Sequence record: NC_061450.1
Strand: one strand, 5' to 3'
DNA length: 64,000 nt
In this document: positions 18,684 to 22,282 of the stretch, one piece after another
Position numbering within the stretch: position 1 is the stretch's first letter
Layout: each line of letters starts with the position of its first letter
The notes under the pieces: model-generated
Seen by the model: the letters and a program-made list of their open reading frames with translations, nothing else
Told to the model about the DNA's origin: nothing
The model's database searches: none
Made by a program: the position numbers and the translations under genes

Positions 18684-18863
18684 CTAAAGATCATCGCTGC
18701 TCCCCAATCGTTGTGCATCAATCAATTTGTTGATGGCGTGTGCCAGTTGTTCGGCATCTTCACGGTCACCAACAATCTCCCACTCATCATCTGCAAACTT
18801 CAATATAGGGTTTGTCGAATCTGAGTAGTGCTTAACTACTGCTTTTCCTATCGGCTTCGGCAT
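18684..18863 (-). CDS. Hypothetical protein (59 aa), below the ORF-track cutoff
   Basis: Hand translation MPKPIGKAVVKHYSDSTNPILKFADDEWEIVGDREDAEQLAHAINKLIDAQRLGSSDDL; overlaps the upstream stop. Confidence 0.6.
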   Translation of the reverse strand: MPKPIGKAVVKHYSDSTNPILKFADDEWEIVGDREDAEQLAHAINKLIDAQRLGSSDDL

Positions 18864-18984
18864 CTTCTCTTGCCCACTTGGCTAGTGTCTGATTAGCTTG
18901 CTTTTGGGCCAACCAAGGAGCACCAAACAACAAGAACCCAACATACACAAGGAAAGCTACGGCTATCCAATTATCAGCAGTCAT
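18832..18984 (-). CDS. Small single-pass membrane protein (about 50 aa)
   Basis: WIAVAFLVYVGFLLFGAPWL TM helix; start reassigned to the ATG at 18984, coupled to the upstream stop. Confidence 0.6.
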   Translation of the reverse strand: MTADNWIAVAFLVYVGFLLFGAPWLAQKQANQTLAKWAREDAEADRKSSS

Positions 18985-19141
18985 CGGGACCACCAGCATC
19001 TTGAGCAAACTCACCATCCATCACATACTGACGGAACTCTTCGGCCGTGTTGCAGGCAGGCTCGACAAACTCACAATCGAATGCCTCTTCCATTTCTTGG
19101 ATGTTGAAATCAACACCATCATTACTTTGATTTTTCTGCAT
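18974..19141 (-). CDS. Small acidic hypothetical protein (55 aa), below the ORF-track cutoff
   Basis: Hand translation MQKNQSNDGVDFNIQEMEEAFDCEFVEPACNTAEEFRQYVMDGEFAQDAGGPDDC; fills the gap between two ORFs. Confidence 0.55.
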   Translation of the reverse strand: MQKNQSNDGVDFNIQEMEEAFDCEFVEPACNTAEEFRQYVMDGEFAQDAGGPDDC

Positions 19142-19334
19142 CAGCTTTGTCCAGAGCGGCGCGTACTAAACAGTCTTTCGCTTCAAGCAGTTTGCGAAGA
19201 CCGGCGGACTTTTCAGCACTATCAGGCAGTGTGTTGTCCATCTGAGTTGCCAGTTCACCGATAGGTCTGGATACTTCCTGCAGGAAGCCAGGCAAGTGAT
19301 CGAACTTGAAATACTTCATGATAGGACTAGGCAT
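19122..19334 (-). CDS. Small helical-hairpin protein; candidate Acb2/Tad1-like nucleotide-signal sponge
   Basis: YFKFDHLP..LQEVSRPIGELA..MDNTLPDSAEKSAGLRKLLEAKDCLVRA. The S.EKS.GL.KL.EA motif recalls Tad1 (SRENACALTHVEEA). The fold link is inference. Confidence 0.55.
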   Translation of the reverse strand: MPSPIMKYFKFDHLPGFLQEVSRPIGELATQMDNTLPDSAEKSAGLRKLLEAKDCLVRAALDKADAEKSK

Positions 19335-19752
19335 TTACAGTCTCCAGACTTTTCAAGAACAGGTTGCGTGCATTGCACAGATACTGATAAGCAAAAAACT
19401 TATCAGCACGCTCGTTAAGATCTGAGTCCAGCTTGATAACAAGCTCACTGATAGCCTGAGTCACACTGAGACTTGCGTCGGTGGTGCTATCGATTGTTGT
19501 CAGCACGTCAAACAGAGTACGGCAATCAGCCTCAGACAAGGCAGACTCTGTTTGACGACCTAGGCAATACCACAGTTGATTGCGTGCCCACAACAAACGA
19601 CTTAGGCTCTCGCGGCTGGTGGCCTGAGTTGAGTTTCGGCCGAAGTTGTCTATGATCAAACGAGCAATATTGGACATAGGCTTGATGATGCGATCACGCA
19701 CTTCATCAGTTGCAGTGCTGTCCAGATCAAACGATTCCAGATTAACTGACAT
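19327..19752 (-). CDS. Tandem two-hairpin paralogue of the adjacent 70-aa protein
   Basis: Both halves (KPMSNIARLIIDNF...SLSRLLWARNQL; QAISELVIKLDSDLNERADKFFAYQYLCNARNLF) align by eye to RPIGELATQMDNTLPDSAEKSAGLRKLLEAKDCL. Confidence 0.7.
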   Translation of the reverse strand: MSVNLESFDLDSTATDEVRDRIIKPMSNIARLIIDNFGRNSTQATSRESLSRLLWARNQLWYCLGRQTESALSEADCRTLFDVLTTIDSTTDASLSVTQAISELVIKLDSDLNERADKFFAYQYLCNARNLFLKSLETVNA

Positions 19753-19754
19753 AT

Positions 19755-19980
19755 AAGTTTACCCTGTATTTGGTGTCAACCAGATACGCACTCAAGGTGA
19801 AAGCATGAATGCGCACCAGGTTGTCTTTCCAACTGCCAGCTCGACGAGCGCCCGTCTCCCAACTGAGATAGGTATCGCCCACTGTCTTTGACCCTACTGC
19901 AAGGTTTCGTTTATCGGCTAGAGGTGTTAAGGGCACCTCAGGCTCTAAACTACAGTATGTCCAGCTGCGGATGTTATCCA
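19755..19980 (-). ncRNA. Putative structured ncRNA or leader, unit B
   Basis: Hairpins GAGGTG/CACCTC, GCTC/GAGC, GTAT.TGGT/ACCA.ATAC; shares AGCCTGAGG and a 23-mer with unit A; the overlapping 79-aa ORF has a GTG start and no SD. Confidence 0.45.
19851..19873. repeat. 23-nt direct repeat, copy 1 (cccgtctcccaactgagataggt)
   Basis: 22/23 identical to 20137..20159. Confidence 0.95.
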
Positions 19981-20019
19981 CTTATTAAGTACATTTGACA
20001 CTAGGCGAGAAAATTGAAA

Positions 20020-20430
20020 ACAGGAAAAAACTAGCCTGCGTCTTCGATGTGTACTCCGCTTGTCACCGTGAACGATTCATCATGTTTCCTACGATGTAGA
20101 CTCCTGCAAGAATCTACAAAGGGCCTCATATCGGTTCCCGTCTCCCCACTGAGATAGGTCTAACCTCCACAAGTTTTAGAGCACGCAACATGACAAGTGC
20201 TGGGAGACACTTGGACCAGGTAGCCGCGTCAATTCCTCAGGCTGTTATTGGCACTCACTTTTAAGACGTTTACTTGAACAGCGCCTTTCACAGACCAACG
20301 TCAAACCAGTTGAGAAATCTGTGTGGCTGAAACAATGCCGAACAAGTGCCGCAGGATAGAAGGCGTGGCAGACATGCCTTCAAGAGTAATCAAGCATTAG
20401 CCAGTGCGCTGAATCACTCGCTGCTACTTG
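20020..20430 (-). ncRNA. Putative structured ncRNA, unit A
   Basis: No ORF >=60 aa on either strand; dense hairpins GAAGGC/GCCTTC, CACAGA/TCTGTG, AAGTG/CACTT, TGTAGA/TCTACA; preceded by a terminator and TGTAAATA; ends near a T-run. Confidence 0.5.
20137..20159. repeat. 23-nt direct repeat, copy 2 (cccgtctccccactgagataggt)
   Basis: 22/23 identical to 19851..19873. Confidence 0.95.
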
Positions 20431-20506: not shown

Positions 20507-22282
20507 TTAGAACATAGATTTACGCACTACGTTGTTATACAGCACATCGTACGGGCTGCCAAACAGTTCTGGACCACGTTGAGCACGCACAGTAACCATG
20601 CCGGTGTGGATGTTGATATTGGTGATTTCAACAGTAGGCTGCTTGGGCTTGATAGTCTCATACGCAGGACTGTTGAGCGTAGGCTGTTCAGCCACCAGCC
20701 GTTCAATGCTTGCACGCTGTTCCGCAGTTGGATTAGGCAGCTTGAAGCGAATCTCTGCGACCTTGTTGCCTCTGACTGAGGTTACTTTGCCACGCATATC
20801 AACGCCCTGTTGAACCAGGTAAGCAGCAATGCGGCGCGAGCCAGCAACAACACGATCATACAGGTCATCGGTCATAACAGGAGCAGCAAAGCGAATCGCA
20901 TTACCCGGCTGCTGTTCAGATAGGTGCAGGCCAGTAACAAAGAAGCCTTCGCTGATAAGACGTACCAGAGTTTCGACAATCTTGCCTTCGTTCTCTGCAA
21001 TGGCAGGCACAGTAAGTTCCGGCGCACCAGTAGCAGGCTCGACATACTCAGGAGCCTCATAGCCTTCTGCACCAGCTACCTGCATACCAACTTGTTGAGC
21101 ACGCGGATAAGCTGAACGCAACAGACCACTAGCGCGAATGATAATGCGACCGTCACGAGCAAGGTCAAACAGTTCATCATTGCTAGAGGTCTGGAACATG
21201 AAGTAATCAACCGGGCTGGTCATCGCGCTGATAGCACGACGGGCCTGTTCCTGTACCTGAGCCGCTGTTGAGCCAAACACGATACGACTGCGGTTTGGAG
21301 TTGCAGGACTGACAGCAAAGAACGCACCGTAAACAACGCTCAGAGACTTGCTGCCTTTGAGTGGTGCAACGCTTTTGGCTTTCTTAGCATTCTCCAGCTT
21401 AGGCAGTTTGATGCCTACTTCGCGGCCTTTGGCGATAGCGCGTGGACTTGTCTGTGCTTTGACTGAGGCAAGAATCTTATCAAGATCACCTTGGCTAACA
21501 ATCTTCTCAAGAGGCACAACCAGGTTCTGCGCAAGATAGTGGCGCTTGCGGAACATGTACACGGAAGTGCCTTTCTTGATTTGCAGAGGCTGTGCCATGT
21601 TGCGACTGACTTCGCCTACAGGTTCAAACGTTGCTTCACGATTAGCACCAACACAGCCAAACGCTTTAGGCCAATCAGACTGTCCGATGAGGTTGGCTGC
21701 ACGCACATGACCACGCACAACAAACTTGATCTTGGGTTCGTCATGCGTAACCAGTTCATAGCTATCACGGTTGAGATACGTCAGGCTGAACTTCTCGCCT
21801 TTGGTCAGTTCCAGTTCGTACTCATCATGAGCATCATCAATGGTCATGCGACGACCTTGATACGTTGCCCACGTGCGTGTTGCTGATTCACTGGCAATCA
21901 ACATCTTGCCAGTAACGTCACTGCTGGTGGTTGCGTAATCGATAGCAGCCTGCAGGACGTCGCGACGATCAACAACTGGCAGAGCGGTGCGTTGTGGATG
22001 CAAGGCGATGTGAACAGCCTTTGACGCAGACATAAACGCAGTCTGTCCATTGTCCAACGTACCAGCAAACTTCATGCCGCTGAGGCGCTCAATAGTTGCA
22101 GCACTCACGCTTGGAAAGTTAACAAAGTCACCAGGAACAAACTCACGGACTTCGCCGTTGCCCCATGCATAAGCGGCTGTAGCGCTTAGTCCCACATACA
22201 TATCTTTAACGCGACTGATGGTATTCACTACAATCCCGAGATCGCGATGAAGACGATTGCCTTCCTTTTTAATCAGAGCCAT
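20507..22282 (-). CDS. Hypothetical protein, probably virion-internal; contains the shared W..(Y/F).G.R domain
   Basis: Long ORF with RBS; internal domain aligns with 35295..35975 and 51271..53148; GLSA at residues 31-34. Confidence 0.75.
   Translation of the reverse strand: MALIKKEGNRLHRDLGIVVNTISRVKDMYVGLSATAAYAWGNGEVREFVPGDFVNFPSVSAATIERLSGMKFAGTLDNGQTAFMSASKAVHIALHPQRTALPVVDRRDVLQAAIDYATTSSDVTGKMLIASESATRTWATYQGRRMTIDDAHDEYELELTKGEKFSLTYLNRDSYELVTHDEPKIKFVVRGHVRAANLIGQSDWPKAFGCVGANREATFEPVGEVSRNMAQPLQIKKGTSVYMFRKRHYLAQNLVVPLEKIVSQGDLDKILASVKAQTSPRAIAKGREVGIKLPKLENAKKAKSVAPLKGSKSLSVVYGAFFAVSPATPNRSRIVFGSTAAQVQEQARRAISAMTSPVDYFMFQTSSNDELFDLARDGRIIIRASGLLRSAYPRAQQVGMQVAGAEGYEAPEYVEPATGAPELTVPAIAENEGKIVETLVRLISEGFFVTGLHLSEQQPGNAIRFAAPVMTDDLYDRVVAGSRRIAAYLVQQGVDMRGKVTSVRGNKVAEIRFKLPNPTAEQRASIERLVAEQPTLNSPAYETIKPKQPTVEITNINIHTGMVTVRAQRGPELFGSPYDVLYNNVVRKSMF

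What the first reader, a model, noticed from the sequence alone, without database searches (positions are those of the whole stretch)
19122..19752. Three copies of an Acb2/Tad1-like helical hairpin in two overlapping genes: candidate anti-defence sponge pair
Seen in sequence: the 70-aa protein (VSRPIGELATQMDNTLPDSAEKSAGLRKLLEAKDCLVRA) aligns position by position with the second half of the 141-aa neighbour (VTQAISELVIKLDSDLNERADKFFAYQYLCNARNLFLKS), and more loosely with its first half (IIKPMSNIARLIIDNF...SLSRLLWARNQL). The genes overlap by 8 nt. Established: Acb2 and Tad1 are small oligomeric helical phage proteins that bind CBASS/Thoeris cyclic-nucleotide signals at subunit interfaces. Inference: a single-domain and a diverged fused-dimer paralogue could form hetero-oligomers with new pocket specificities, widening the range of signals captured.
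Basis: partly seen in the sequence, partly recalled or inferred. Interest (0 to 1): 0.75.

Follow-up and report, generated by a model that had tools for sequence, protein, structure and literature searches.

The report
Duplicated orphan sponge-like hairpin gene pair
Two overlapping genes of an Erwinia jumbo phage encode one and two copies of the same small helical-hairpin unit; the unit belongs to a very large, very conserved phage family that looks like the Acb2/Tad1 immune-signal sponges, but no function has been shown for it.

Summary
The window is Erwinia phage pEa_SNUABM_5. Genes 00119 (70 aa) and 00120 (141 aa) overlap by 8 nt.

**Repeats.**
- With relatives added, it also matches the N-terminal half (P 8e-5).
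- AlphaFold models show one, and two, short-helix-plus-hairpin units.

**The 70-aa family.**
- It is a huge phage and prophage accessory family (phrog_5120/1761) with more than 4,000 clusters, 70-80% identical across Proteobacteria.
- It is unnamed in every source consulted.

**The 141-aa partner.** It occurs only in this jumbo-phage clade, always just upstream of the short gene. It evolves much faster: 35% identity against 71-81% for the same phage pairs.

**Acb2/Tad1 link (weak).**
- For: Pfam PF24729 hits are below threshold, and about 14 of the top 50 Foldseek BFVD matches are named Acb2/Tad1 hairpin proteins.
- Against: no similarity to solved Acb2, and no Foldseek match in the PDB.

**Sponge function (indirect).** Tal et al. 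2025 picked relatives as predicted hexamers with charged pockets, and list relatives fused to Sequestin. The rows read for those relatives showed no inhibition of Thoeris I/II, cGAMP-CBASS or Pycsar.

**Verdict.** A real tandem-duplicated paralogue pair of an orphan, sponge-like family. Hetero-oligomer formation is untested.

The parts
19122..19334 (-). Gene pEaSNUABM5_00119. It encodes a 70-aa single-unit helical-hairpin protein, a member of the very conserved phage and prophage family phrog_5120/phrog_1761.
   Evidence: ORF. Annotation. phrog_1761 E 2e-33 and phrog_5120 E 3e-24. 4186 clusters of relatives. AlphaFold pLDDT 94 with helices 4-9, 16-35 and 40-69.
19161..19289 (-). Core hairpin of the 70-aa protein, residues 16-58. 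This is the stretch that aligns to both halves of the neighbouring protein.
   Evidence: hhalign alignments. Smith-Waterman alignment.
19327..19752 (-). Gene pEaSNUABM5_00120. It encodes a 141-aa protein made of two diverged copies of the same unit (a covalent pseudo-dimer).
   Evidence: ORF. Only 8 relatives, all in the same locus of related jumbo phages. AlphaFold pLDDT 81 and pTM 0.80, with two helix-plus-hairpin units.
19537..19752 (-). N-terminal repeat of the 141-aa protein, residues 1-72. The core match is residues 20-66, at 19555-19695.
   Evidence: hhalign against the short family P 8.4e-5. Shuffle control. hmmsearch domain 1 in relatives. Positions 4-58 of the 141-aa family HMM hit short-family ORFs in L086 and L087.
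19330..19536 (-). C-terminal repeat of the 141-aa protein, residues 73-141. The core match is residues 92-134, at 19351-19479.
   Evidence: Smith-Waterman z 5.2. hhalign P 6.7e-6. Shuffle control. Reciprocal HMM hits through positions 92-135.
19327..19334 (.). The 8-nt overlap between the stop region of the 141-aa gene and the start of the 70-aa gene. It suggests coupled translation.
   Evidence: An equivalent overlap of 8 nt occurs in Yoloswag and of 1 nt in L003.
19777..20059 (-). Conserved, apparently structured non-coding element immediately upstream of the pair. It may be a leader or regulatory RNA, and whether it belongs to the system is not settled.
   Evidence: Near-invariant DNA blocks in four phages. 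RNAalifold gives 64 pairs, 8 of them with compensatory changes. Column-shuffle z is -11.9 and single-sequence z is -2.57. No Rfam hit. Single copy in the window and confined to this phage clade.

Best explanation
**Shown.**
- The two genes are paralogues.
- The 70-aa protein is a standard member of a very large, highly conserved family of about 62-aa phage and prophage accessory proteins. Each is a short helix followed by a two-helix hairpin. The second helix carries the near-invariant motif GLRKLLEAKD-x-x-VRA.
- The 141-aa protein arose by tandem duplication and fusion of that unit. It has diverged strongly and keeps mainly the structural positions: the Pro after helix 1, the LRxLL and A-[KR]-[DN] motifs, and the LP-x-x-x-[DE]-K turn.
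- The pair is conserved as a translationally overlapping unit in one clade of Erwinia jumbo phages.

**Inferred.**
- The short protein assembles into a homo-oligomer, predicted as a hexamer for relatives by others.
- It has positively charged pockets between subunits and soaks up a small, invariant host molecule, most likely a nucleotide immune signal other than the five tested so far.
- It may be a distant relative of the Acb2/Tad1 hairpin sponges.
- The fused, fast-evolving partner supplies two non-identical hairpins per chain. It then either joins the short protein in mixed assemblies or forms a trimer of pseudo-dimers. Either way it would create asymmetric pockets with a different specificity.
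For: **Paralogy and duplication.**, and matching secondary-structure units.

**Conserved pairing.** The long gene sits directly upstream of a 66-70 aa family member in Yoloswag, L003, L019, L020 and L025. The long gene is absent from the 76 other viral loci that carry the short gene and from all other phage records.

**Unequal rates.** For the same phage pairs the long protein is 34-40% identical and the short one 69-83%.

**Accessory ('moron') behaviour.**
- An identical 62-aa protein is found in prophages with different terminase and portal types.
- It sits between the lysis and terminase genes, or between head and tail genes.
- Its position varies in Acinetobacter, Mycobacterium, Gordonia, Brevibacterium and N4-like phages.

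**Conservation pattern.** It resembles that of a true sponge: Acb2 relatives are also 70-80% identical across genera.

**Sponge-like traits from the literature.**
- Three relatives were among 124 candidates chosen for high-confidence homo-oligomer models with positively charged interface pockets. They were predicted as hexamers (Tal et al., bioRxiv 10.1101/2025.07.12.664507, Table S2).
- The Sequestin homologue table of that paper holds this family's motif 12 times in the part stored. The three such rows read show the domain N-terminal to a Sequestin-like part (Table S1).
- The paper shows that sponge domains are often fused to one another.

**Acb2/Tad1 likeness.**
Against: - In the screen table, three relatives gave no culture collapse in any test read. 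[quoted passage not shown]
- That was a paired, high-throughput, heterologous screen. Its authors expect only a minority of the candidates to be real sponges.
- There is no significant sequence or profile similarity to solved Acb2.
- Foldseek finds nothing in the PDB for either model.
- Pfam PF24729 is not reached.
- Weak hairpin hits are unreliable: a family profile also matches a designed four-helix bundle at E 6e-6.
- Polar residues invariant in the short family (H13, S22, E41, R47, E51) are mostly replaced in one or both repeats of the 141-aa protein. The partner may therefore have lost the ancestral pocket.
- No oligomer model was computed here.
Confidence: 0.45

Rival explanations
1. The 141-aa protein works on its own. 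As a covalent pseudo-dimer it forms a trimer equivalent to the short protein's hexamer and binds a different ligand. The two proteins are neighbours by descent only and do not form mixed assemblies.
For: It is a complete two-unit protein with a confident compact model (pTM 0.80). It has diverged so far from the short protein that shared interfaces may be lost. Fused two-domain sponges that act as single proteins are known.
Against: The strict conservation of adjacency and of the overlapping stop and start codons in every phage that has the long gene fits stoichiometric co-production. No phage was found with the long gene alone.
Confidence: 0.25
2. The family is not a small-molecule sponge. These are small helical adaptor or inhibitor proteins that bind a conserved host or phage protein or nucleic acid, for example a defence effector or a component of gene expression. 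The duplication diversifies that binding surface.
For: No inhibition was seen in any screen result read, across five signalling systems. The hairpin fold is generic, and Foldseek against the PDB gives only unrelated helical hairpins. Family members carry varied extra domains: a P-loop-like N-terminus, a Cys-rich anti-TRAP-like tail and an unknown helical tail. Very high conservation could equally reflect a conserved protein target.
Against: The family spans phages of Proteobacteria, Actinobacteria and cyanobacteria, which is easier to explain by a universal small ligand. Relatives are fused to the sponge Sequestin, and others selected relatives for charged interface pockets. BFVD structural neighbours are enriched for Acb2/Tad1 hairpin proteins.
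Confidence: 0.22
3. The two proteins are virion or assembly factors, because they lie next to the baseplate genes.
For: In this phage the small-gene cluster lies between the PAAR-like, gp25-like and gp6-like baseplate genes and a conserved 591-aa gene. In some other phages the short gene lies among head genes.
Against: The position varies widely between phages: after the lysis genes, in early regions, and near nucleotide-metabolism genes. The identical protein occurs in prophages with unrelated structural modules. No structural-protein family was hit. The weak match to the phage P1 sheath is below significance.
Confidence: 0.05
4. The similarity between the two genes is a chance resemblance of amphipathic helices, and there is no duplication.
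For: BLASTP finds nothing. The two halves of the 141-aa protein do not match each other directly. Profiles of hairpin proteins can hit unrelated designed bundles.
Against: Shuffle controls. Reciprocal and specific HMM detection, with no false positives among 3195 ORF segments. Negative scores against another hairpin family. Matches fall at positions that are invariant in the family, the unit architecture is the same, and the genes are adjacent.
Confidence: 0.03

Closest known systems
Acb2 (PaMx33, JBD67 and T4 Vs.4 type; PDB 8h2j, 8ixz) and short Acb2 homologues such as Acb2_43 (PDB 9ptq)
   Same: A small phage accessory protein built on two long antiparallel helices. Relatives are predicted to form hexamers (Tal et al., Table S2). 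It occupies moron-like positions, for example between head genes as in JBD67. It is unusually well conserved across hosts. An LP-x-G-x-EKS-like turn aligns with Acb2_43. BFVD neighbours carry the Acb2/Tad1 hairpin name.
   Different: It does not reach Pfam PF24729. Profile-profile probability against JBD67-type Acb2 is 0.2%. No PDB fold match was found. Acb2's Tyr and Lys ligand contacts have no conserved counterparts across the family. In the rows read, relatives did not inhibit cGAMP-CBASS or type I Thoeris. No tandem-duplicated Acb2 turned up in the term search of the survey paper or in the sections of the other papers that were read.
Tad1 (Thoeris anti-defence 1; PDB 7UAW as cited)
   Same: It shares the hairpin domain grouped with Acb2 in Pfam PF24729, and it is a homo-hexameric sponge with pockets at the interfaces.
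   Different: Neither protein gave a Tad1 chain among the sequence hits (E up to 10) or the top 50 fold matches. Both models are all-helical.
Sequestin (Pfam PF21825), and fused sponges such as Tad2-Acb4, Tad2-Sequestin and Sequestin-Acb4
   Same: A short (60-80 aa) all-helical phage protein, usually stand-alone. Sponge domains tend to be joined in one chain, and this family's domain is found joined to Sequestin. The 141-aa protein is likewise two small units in one chain.
   Different: No PF21825 hit was found. In the 141-aa protein the fusion is of two copies of the same unit rather than of two different families, and a free single copy is kept next to it.
PHROG families phrog_5120 (79 positions) and phrog_1761 (148 positions), both of unknown function
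   Same: The 70-aa protein is a clear member (E 3e-24 and 2e-33).
   Different: The 141-aa protein hits no PHROG. phrog_1761-type proteins, for example Dickeya phage AD1 gp025, carry a P-loop-like N-terminal part instead of a second hairpin.

Membership tests
Acb2/Tad1 hairpin superfamily (Pfam PF24729) | Score above the Pfam gathering cut-off of 27 bits | tested here: not met
   The window's 70-aa and 141-aa proteins have no hit at E <= 1. Relatives score 12.8-16.4 bits. Divergent actinophage relatives have no hit. True Acb2 of JBD67 scores 59.6 bits.
Acb2/Tad1 hairpin superfamily (Pfam PF24729) | Core of two long antiparallel helices, and structural similarity to members | tested here: inconclusive
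   The hairpin is predicted with pLDDT 94. In BFVD about 14 of the top 50 matches are named Acb2/Tad1 hairpin proteins, the best at E 0.019, TM 0.72 and 35% identity. Foldseek against the PDB finds no Acb2 or Tad1 chain in the top 50, best E 1.2. The fold is generic.
Acb2/Tad1 hairpin superfamily (Pfam PF24729) | Sequence or profile similarity to solved members | tested here: not met
   phmmer and hmmsearch against the PDB give no Acb2 or Tad1 hit, except 9ptq at E 0.1-0.3. hhalign against 24 Acb2 sequences gives probability 0.2%. HMM cross-scores have a median of about -1 bit.
Acb2/Tad1 hairpin superfamily (Pfam PF24729) | Homo-hexamer with ligand pockets at the subunit interfaces | not testable with these tools
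   No multimer prediction is available here. Tal et al., Table S2, list an AlphaFold-Multimer 'hexamer' or 'dimer/hexamer' for three relatives.
Acb2/Tad1 hairpin superfamily (Pfam PF24729) | Conserved ligand-contact residues (Acb2 Y11 and K26; Acb2_43 T4, H5, L6, V7, K19, K55) | tested here: inconclusive
   No reliable alignment to Acb2 exists. Y8 and K23 of the family have the same spacing as Y11 and K26, but they are not conserved in actinophage members.
Acb2/Tad1 hairpin superfamily (Pfam PF24729) | Binds cyclic nucleotide or ADPR-derived signals and inhibits CBASS or Thoeris | not testable with these tools
   Published screen rows for relatives were negative in every test read, covering Thoeris I and II, cGAMP-CBASS and two Pycsar systems. 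Other signals were not tested.
Short hairpin family with the GLRKLLEAKD motif (phrog_5120 / phrog_1761) | Significant match over the whole unit, and the invariant second-helix motif | tested here: met
   For the 70-aa protein: E 2e-33 and 3e-24, 69-93% identity to relatives, and all invariant columns present.
Short hairpin family with the GLRKLLEAKD motif (phrog_5120 / phrog_1761) | The same features, tested on the 141-aa protein | tested here: inconclusive
   No PHROG hit, and several invariant polar residues are replaced. Remote homology of both halves is nevertheless supported. It is a diverged duplicated derivative rather than a standard member.
Sequestin (PF21825), Tad2 (PF11195), Acb4 (PF13876) | Pfam domain match | tested here: not met
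   No such hit for either protein or for 35 relatives at E <= 1.

The most novel reading that the evidence does not exclude
The ultra-conserved short protein is an orphan sponge for an immune or signalling molecule that has not yet been tested. In this jumbo-phage clade it works as a two-gene system. The fast-evolving covalent pseudo-dimer co-assembles with it into asymmetric particles whose pockets differ from those of the homo-oligomer. That would be a way of diversifying sponge specificity by duplication, fusion and hetero-oligomerisation. The pair may be under the control of the conserved structured RNA leader found just upstream.
Probability: 0.15. Interest if true: 0.8.

Novelty: new variant of a known kind. 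Interest (0 to 1): 0.55.

Why it matters
If the short family is a sponge, it would be one of the largest: more than 4,000 clusters here, and 317 of about 50,000 phage records. No function has been shown for it, and every screen result read for relatives was negative, so its target would be an unknown or untested host signal.

The pair in this phage gives a natural comparison. One copy has barely changed, and next to it is a duplicated, fused copy that evolves fast. This shows which positions are structural and which are free to change. It also suggests one way in which small oligomeric counter-defence proteins could gain new specificities.

If the family is not a sponge, the result still marks a very widespread and unusually conserved phage accessory protein for which no name or function was found.

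Tried and rejected
- **BLASTP of the two proteins.** No alignment. Smith-Waterman and profile methods superseded it.
- **Sequence and profile searches of the PDB.** No Acb2, Tad1 or Tad2. The recurrent weak hit to phage P1 sheath Gp22 (8jaj) was judged chance.
- **NCBIfam and PADLOC.** Nothing.
- **A bridge to Acb2.** I fetched true Acb2 (JBD67 gp34, accession given in PMC10312549) and built a 24-member alignment. No profile similarity.
- **A bridge through divergent actinophage relatives** (KayaCho, Hosp, Nigel, phiAsp2). None reaches PF24729.
- **Exhaustive HMM search with the 141-aa profile.** Only four representative clusters, all from the same clade. No link to other families at E <= 0.001.
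- **Y8/K23 as counterparts of Acb2 Y11/K26.** Rejected, because these residues are not conserved across the wider family.
- **TadIV-1 (T4 vs.3).** Considered and rejected: a different family, confined to Straboviridae.
- **Literature.** No paper text holds the family motif. It is absent from the supplements of three other anti-defence papers.
- **Promoter, terminator and Rfam scans of the locus.** Nothing above chance.
- **Sequestin fusion.** I could not confirm it with my own tools. The one long family ORF among the 80 fetched loci (L056) has a different, unassigned tail. The fusion therefore rests on the paper's table.
Full report
**Where this is.** The window is part of Erwinia phage pEa_SNUABM_5 (MW366843.1, genus Rivsvirus), a 267-kb jumbo phage. 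Window position equals record position minus 62,000. The finding covers genes pEaSNUABM5_00119 (19122-19334, minus strand, 70 aa) and 00120 (19327-19752, minus strand, 141 aa). Both are annotated as hypothetical proteins, and they overlap by 8 nt. They head a run of small, mostly overlapping genes. That run lies between a conserved 591-aa gene with a KMPT-N domain and the baseplate genes, which resemble T4 gp5.4 (PAAR), gp25 and gp6.

**Is the repeat real?** Yes.
It pairs residues 20-58 of the 70-aa protein with residues 96-134 of the 141-aa protein. Its score is 47, z 5.2, and 0 to 1 of 2000 shuffles reach it. BLASTP missed it.
- The N-terminal half is not above chance at that level (z 0.25).
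- I then collected relatives. The 141-aa protein has eight, found by a word-indexed search and by an exhaustive HMM search of 1.84 billion representatives.
- Against a nine-member alignment, the short family's profile matches the C-terminal half at P 6.7e-6 (probability 85%). It matches the N-terminal half at P 8.4e-5 (probability 61%). Both matches use residues 16/19-58 of the short protein.
- Column-shuffled controls give scores of 9.4 +/- 2, against 26.6 and 31.4 observed.
- A plain HMM of the short family finds two domains in the long proteins.
- The reverse search is specific. The long family's HMM scores 120 short-family proteins at a median of 13.9 bits, but 120 Acb2 proteins, another phage hairpin family, at -1.0 bits.
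- Among 3195 ORF segments from 80 viral loci it hit only short-family ORFs and true relatives at E < 0.01.
- The two halves of the long protein no longer match each other directly (P 0.14).
- AlphaFold2 gives the same unit once in the short protein: helices 4-9, 16-35 and 40-69, pLDDT 94. It gives the unit twice in the long one: helices 6-9, 16-36, 43-65, then 74-84, 92-109, 116-137, pLDDT 81, pTM 0.80.
- Shared positions include the Pro after the first long helix, an LRxLL stretch, an A-[KR]-[DN] triplet and a C-x-VR end in the N-terminal repeat. The C-terminal repeat of relatives shares the LP-E-R-V-D-K turn.

**What the short protein is.**
- It is a clear member of PHROG families 5120 and 1761, both of unknown function. 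It has no Pfam, NCBIfam or PADLOC hit.
- It has 4186 relatives at the 90%-cluster level. Most are 61-66 aa and 70-80% identical, from Enterobacterales, Xanthobacter, Rhizobiales and Methylovulum.
- It occurs in 317 phage records: Vibrio, Erwinia, Acinetobacter, Brevibacterium, Gordonia, Mycobacterium, N4-like roseophages and a Microcystis phage.
- Across this whole range 15 columns are invariant: F9, H13, L14, L18, S22, A29, L36, E41, L46, R47, L49, E51, A52, K53 and V57.
- The seven bacterial loci examined, for two of these proteins, all sit in prophages, in classic accessory spots. One identical 62-aa protein lies between the lysis genes and the terminase in prophages with HK97-like, P22-like and Mu-like structural modules. 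In a Xanthobacter prophage a copy lies between the head and tail genes after a 540-bp gap.
- In virulent and temperate phages its position varies freely.
- Some members carry extra parts: a P-loop-like N-terminus in Dickeya phage AD1 gp025, which is the phrog_1761 form; a Cys-rich tail; and an unassigned helical tail.

**What the long protein is.**
- It is confined to this phage clade: pEa_SNUABM_5, Yoloswag and a few metagenomic contigs.
- It is always directly upstream of the short gene, with overlapping or abutting stop and start codons.
- None of the other 76 viral loci that carry the short gene has a second copy.
- For the same phage pairs the long protein is 34-40% identical where the short one is 69-83%.
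- Several polar residues that never change in the short family are replaced in one or both repeats.

**Is it Acb2/Tad1-like?** Partly.

In favour:
- Pfam has a family PF24729 'Acb2/Tad1, hairpin domain' of 58 positions. Eight of 35 relatives, and a Brevibacterium phage member, match it in one register at 12.8-16.4 bits. The cut-off is 27.
- A broader family profile touches PDB 9ptq, 'Acb2 homolog 43', at E 0.1, through the turn motif.
- In the BFVD library of predicted viral structures, the six best matches to the 70-aa model are family members. Then come many proteins named 'Acb2/Tad1 hairpin domain-containing protein', about 14 of the top 50. The best has E 0.019, TM 0.72 and 35% identity over 71 columns.

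Against:
- The window protein itself has no Pfam hit.
- I fetched a true Acb2, JBD67 gp34, using an accession given in PMC10312549. It scores 59.6 bits on PF24729 and finds 8h2j and 8ixz. A 24-member Acb2 alignment shows no profile similarity to either family: probability 0.2% and 0.9%.
- Foldseek against the PDB finds nothing for either model.
- Divergent actinophage members do not bridge to PF24729.
- A family profile also hits the de novo designed bundle 4D2 at E 6e-6. Weak hairpin matches therefore have to be discounted.

My reading is that the family is plausibly a distant branch of the same superfamily, but membership is not shown.

**Is it a sponge?** The evidence is indirect and comes from one paper: Tal et al., bioRxiv 10.1101/2025.07.12.664507.
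- Their pipeline kept short phage proteins of unknown function whose AlphaFold-Multimer homo-oligomers have several positively charged pockets at the interfaces.
- Their candidate table holds at least three members of this family, of 61, 78 and 93 aa, predicted as hexamer, hexamer and dimer/hexamer.
[quoted passage not shown] For the 61-aa protein four are negative and one transformation failed. Of the 78-aa protein's row only the first test, also negative, was read.
- Their table of Sequestin homologues holds this family's motif 12 times in the part stored. The three such rows read show this family's domain N-terminal to a Sequestin-like part.
- The paper itself found Sequestin by the rule that sponge domains are fused to each other.
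- I found no other text that holds the family motif, and no paper that names the family.
- Conservation of 70-80% across distant hosts is also seen in Acb2. It fits a protein that binds an invariant small molecule.

**Most likely mechanism.**

Shown:
- A unit of short helix plus hairpin was duplicated and fused.
- The fused copy diverged quickly while the free copy stayed almost unchanged.
- The two genes are kept as an overlapping pair.

Inferred:
- The short protein forms a homo-oligomer with pockets between chains and sequesters a host signal that the published screen did not cover.
- The long protein contributes two different hairpins per chain. It forms either a mixed particle with the short protein or a trimer of pseudo-dimers, which gives asymmetric pockets.

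I put 0.45 on this overall. The paralogy itself I hold at about 0.9. The main rivals are that the long protein acts alone (0.25) and that the family binds a macromolecule rather than a small signal (0.22).

**Seen in passing.**
- The 525-bp gap upstream of the pair holds a strongly conserved element on the same strand, at about 19777-20059.
- Blocks such as a 23-mer at 19813-19835 are identical in four phages whose adjacent proteins are only 35% identical. The differences are not spaced by three, and the reading frame relative to the downstream start differs between phages.
- RNAalifold gives 64 pairs, 8 of them with compensatory changes. They include a hairpin of about 20 bp that ends 25 nt before the start codon.
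- Controls: column-shuffle z -11.9 and single-sequence z -2.57.
- There is no Rfam or tRNA hit. The element is single copy and confined to this clade.
- It overlaps the annotated CDS 00121, which may therefore not be a protein gene.

- No multimer prediction, ligand docking or Pfam profile-profile comparison was available.
- The Sequestin fusion rests on the paper's table, not on my own domain scan.
The short motifs used in literature searches were copied from the window's own translated protein.

Noticed in passing
window 19777-20059 (- strand): A conserved, apparently structured non-coding element lies just upstream of the gene pair. It has near-invariant blocks in four phages, 64 predicted pairs (8 with compensatory changes) and a column-shuffle z of -11.9. 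It has no Rfam hit, is single copy and is confined to this clade. It overlaps annotated CDS pEaSNUABM5_00121 (19742-19882), which may not be a protein gene.
   Followed up: partly
L017:2228-2680 (Dickeya phage AD1 gp025); also other Erwinia and Dickeya jumbo phages at about 17-20 kb of their records: The phrog_1761 form of the family is about 150 aa. It has an N-terminal part with a Walker-A-like GDVGSGKS motif, with weak Pfam hits to nSTAND NTPase 5 and CoaE, followed by the hairpin unit. A nucleotide-binding-like module is thus fused to the family domain.
   Followed up: partly
Table S1 of bioRxiv 10.1101/2025.07.12.664507; P0030 and P0090; BFVD A0A6G6XYP8; L056:1501-2007: The family domain occurs fused to other parts: to Sequestin at its C-terminus, to a Cys-rich anti-TRAP-like tail, and to an unassigned 100-aa helical tail.
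   Followed up: partly
PDB 8jaj chain a (phage P1 tail sheath Gp22), residues 426-471: Three different family profiles give a recurrent weak match (E 0.011-0.048) to a stretch of the P1 sheath protein. The match covers the first helix and the turn. It is probably chance and was not pursued.
   Followed up: no
PDB 7ah0, 9i38, 8ccr (de novo designed protein 4D2): A diverse family profile hits a designed four-helix bundle at E 6e-6, through repeated helix-turn matches. This is a useful warning about weak profile hits between helical hairpins.
   Followed up: no
window 18684-19141 (- strand): Downstream of the pair are further small overlapping ORFs. The 55-aa ORF (18974-19141) overlaps the 70-aa gene by 20 nt. 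A 61-aa ORF has a predicted membrane segment and a weak holin-family hit. A 59-aa ORF follows. The 55-aa protein is conserved as the C-terminal part of a 108-aa ORF in L003.
   Followed up: no
window 20507-22282 (- strand): A conserved 591-aa protein (phrog_32352) has a KMPT-N domain (PF20294, E 1.6e-17) at residues 137-197. It borders the small-gene cluster in all related phages.
   Followed up: no
P0125 (171 aa, from a contig of 259,559 bases): In one relative the 141-aa gene is called with a 30-residue N-terminal extension. That extension is the translation of the conserved upstream element. This is more likely a gene-calling artefact than a real extension.
   Followed up: no
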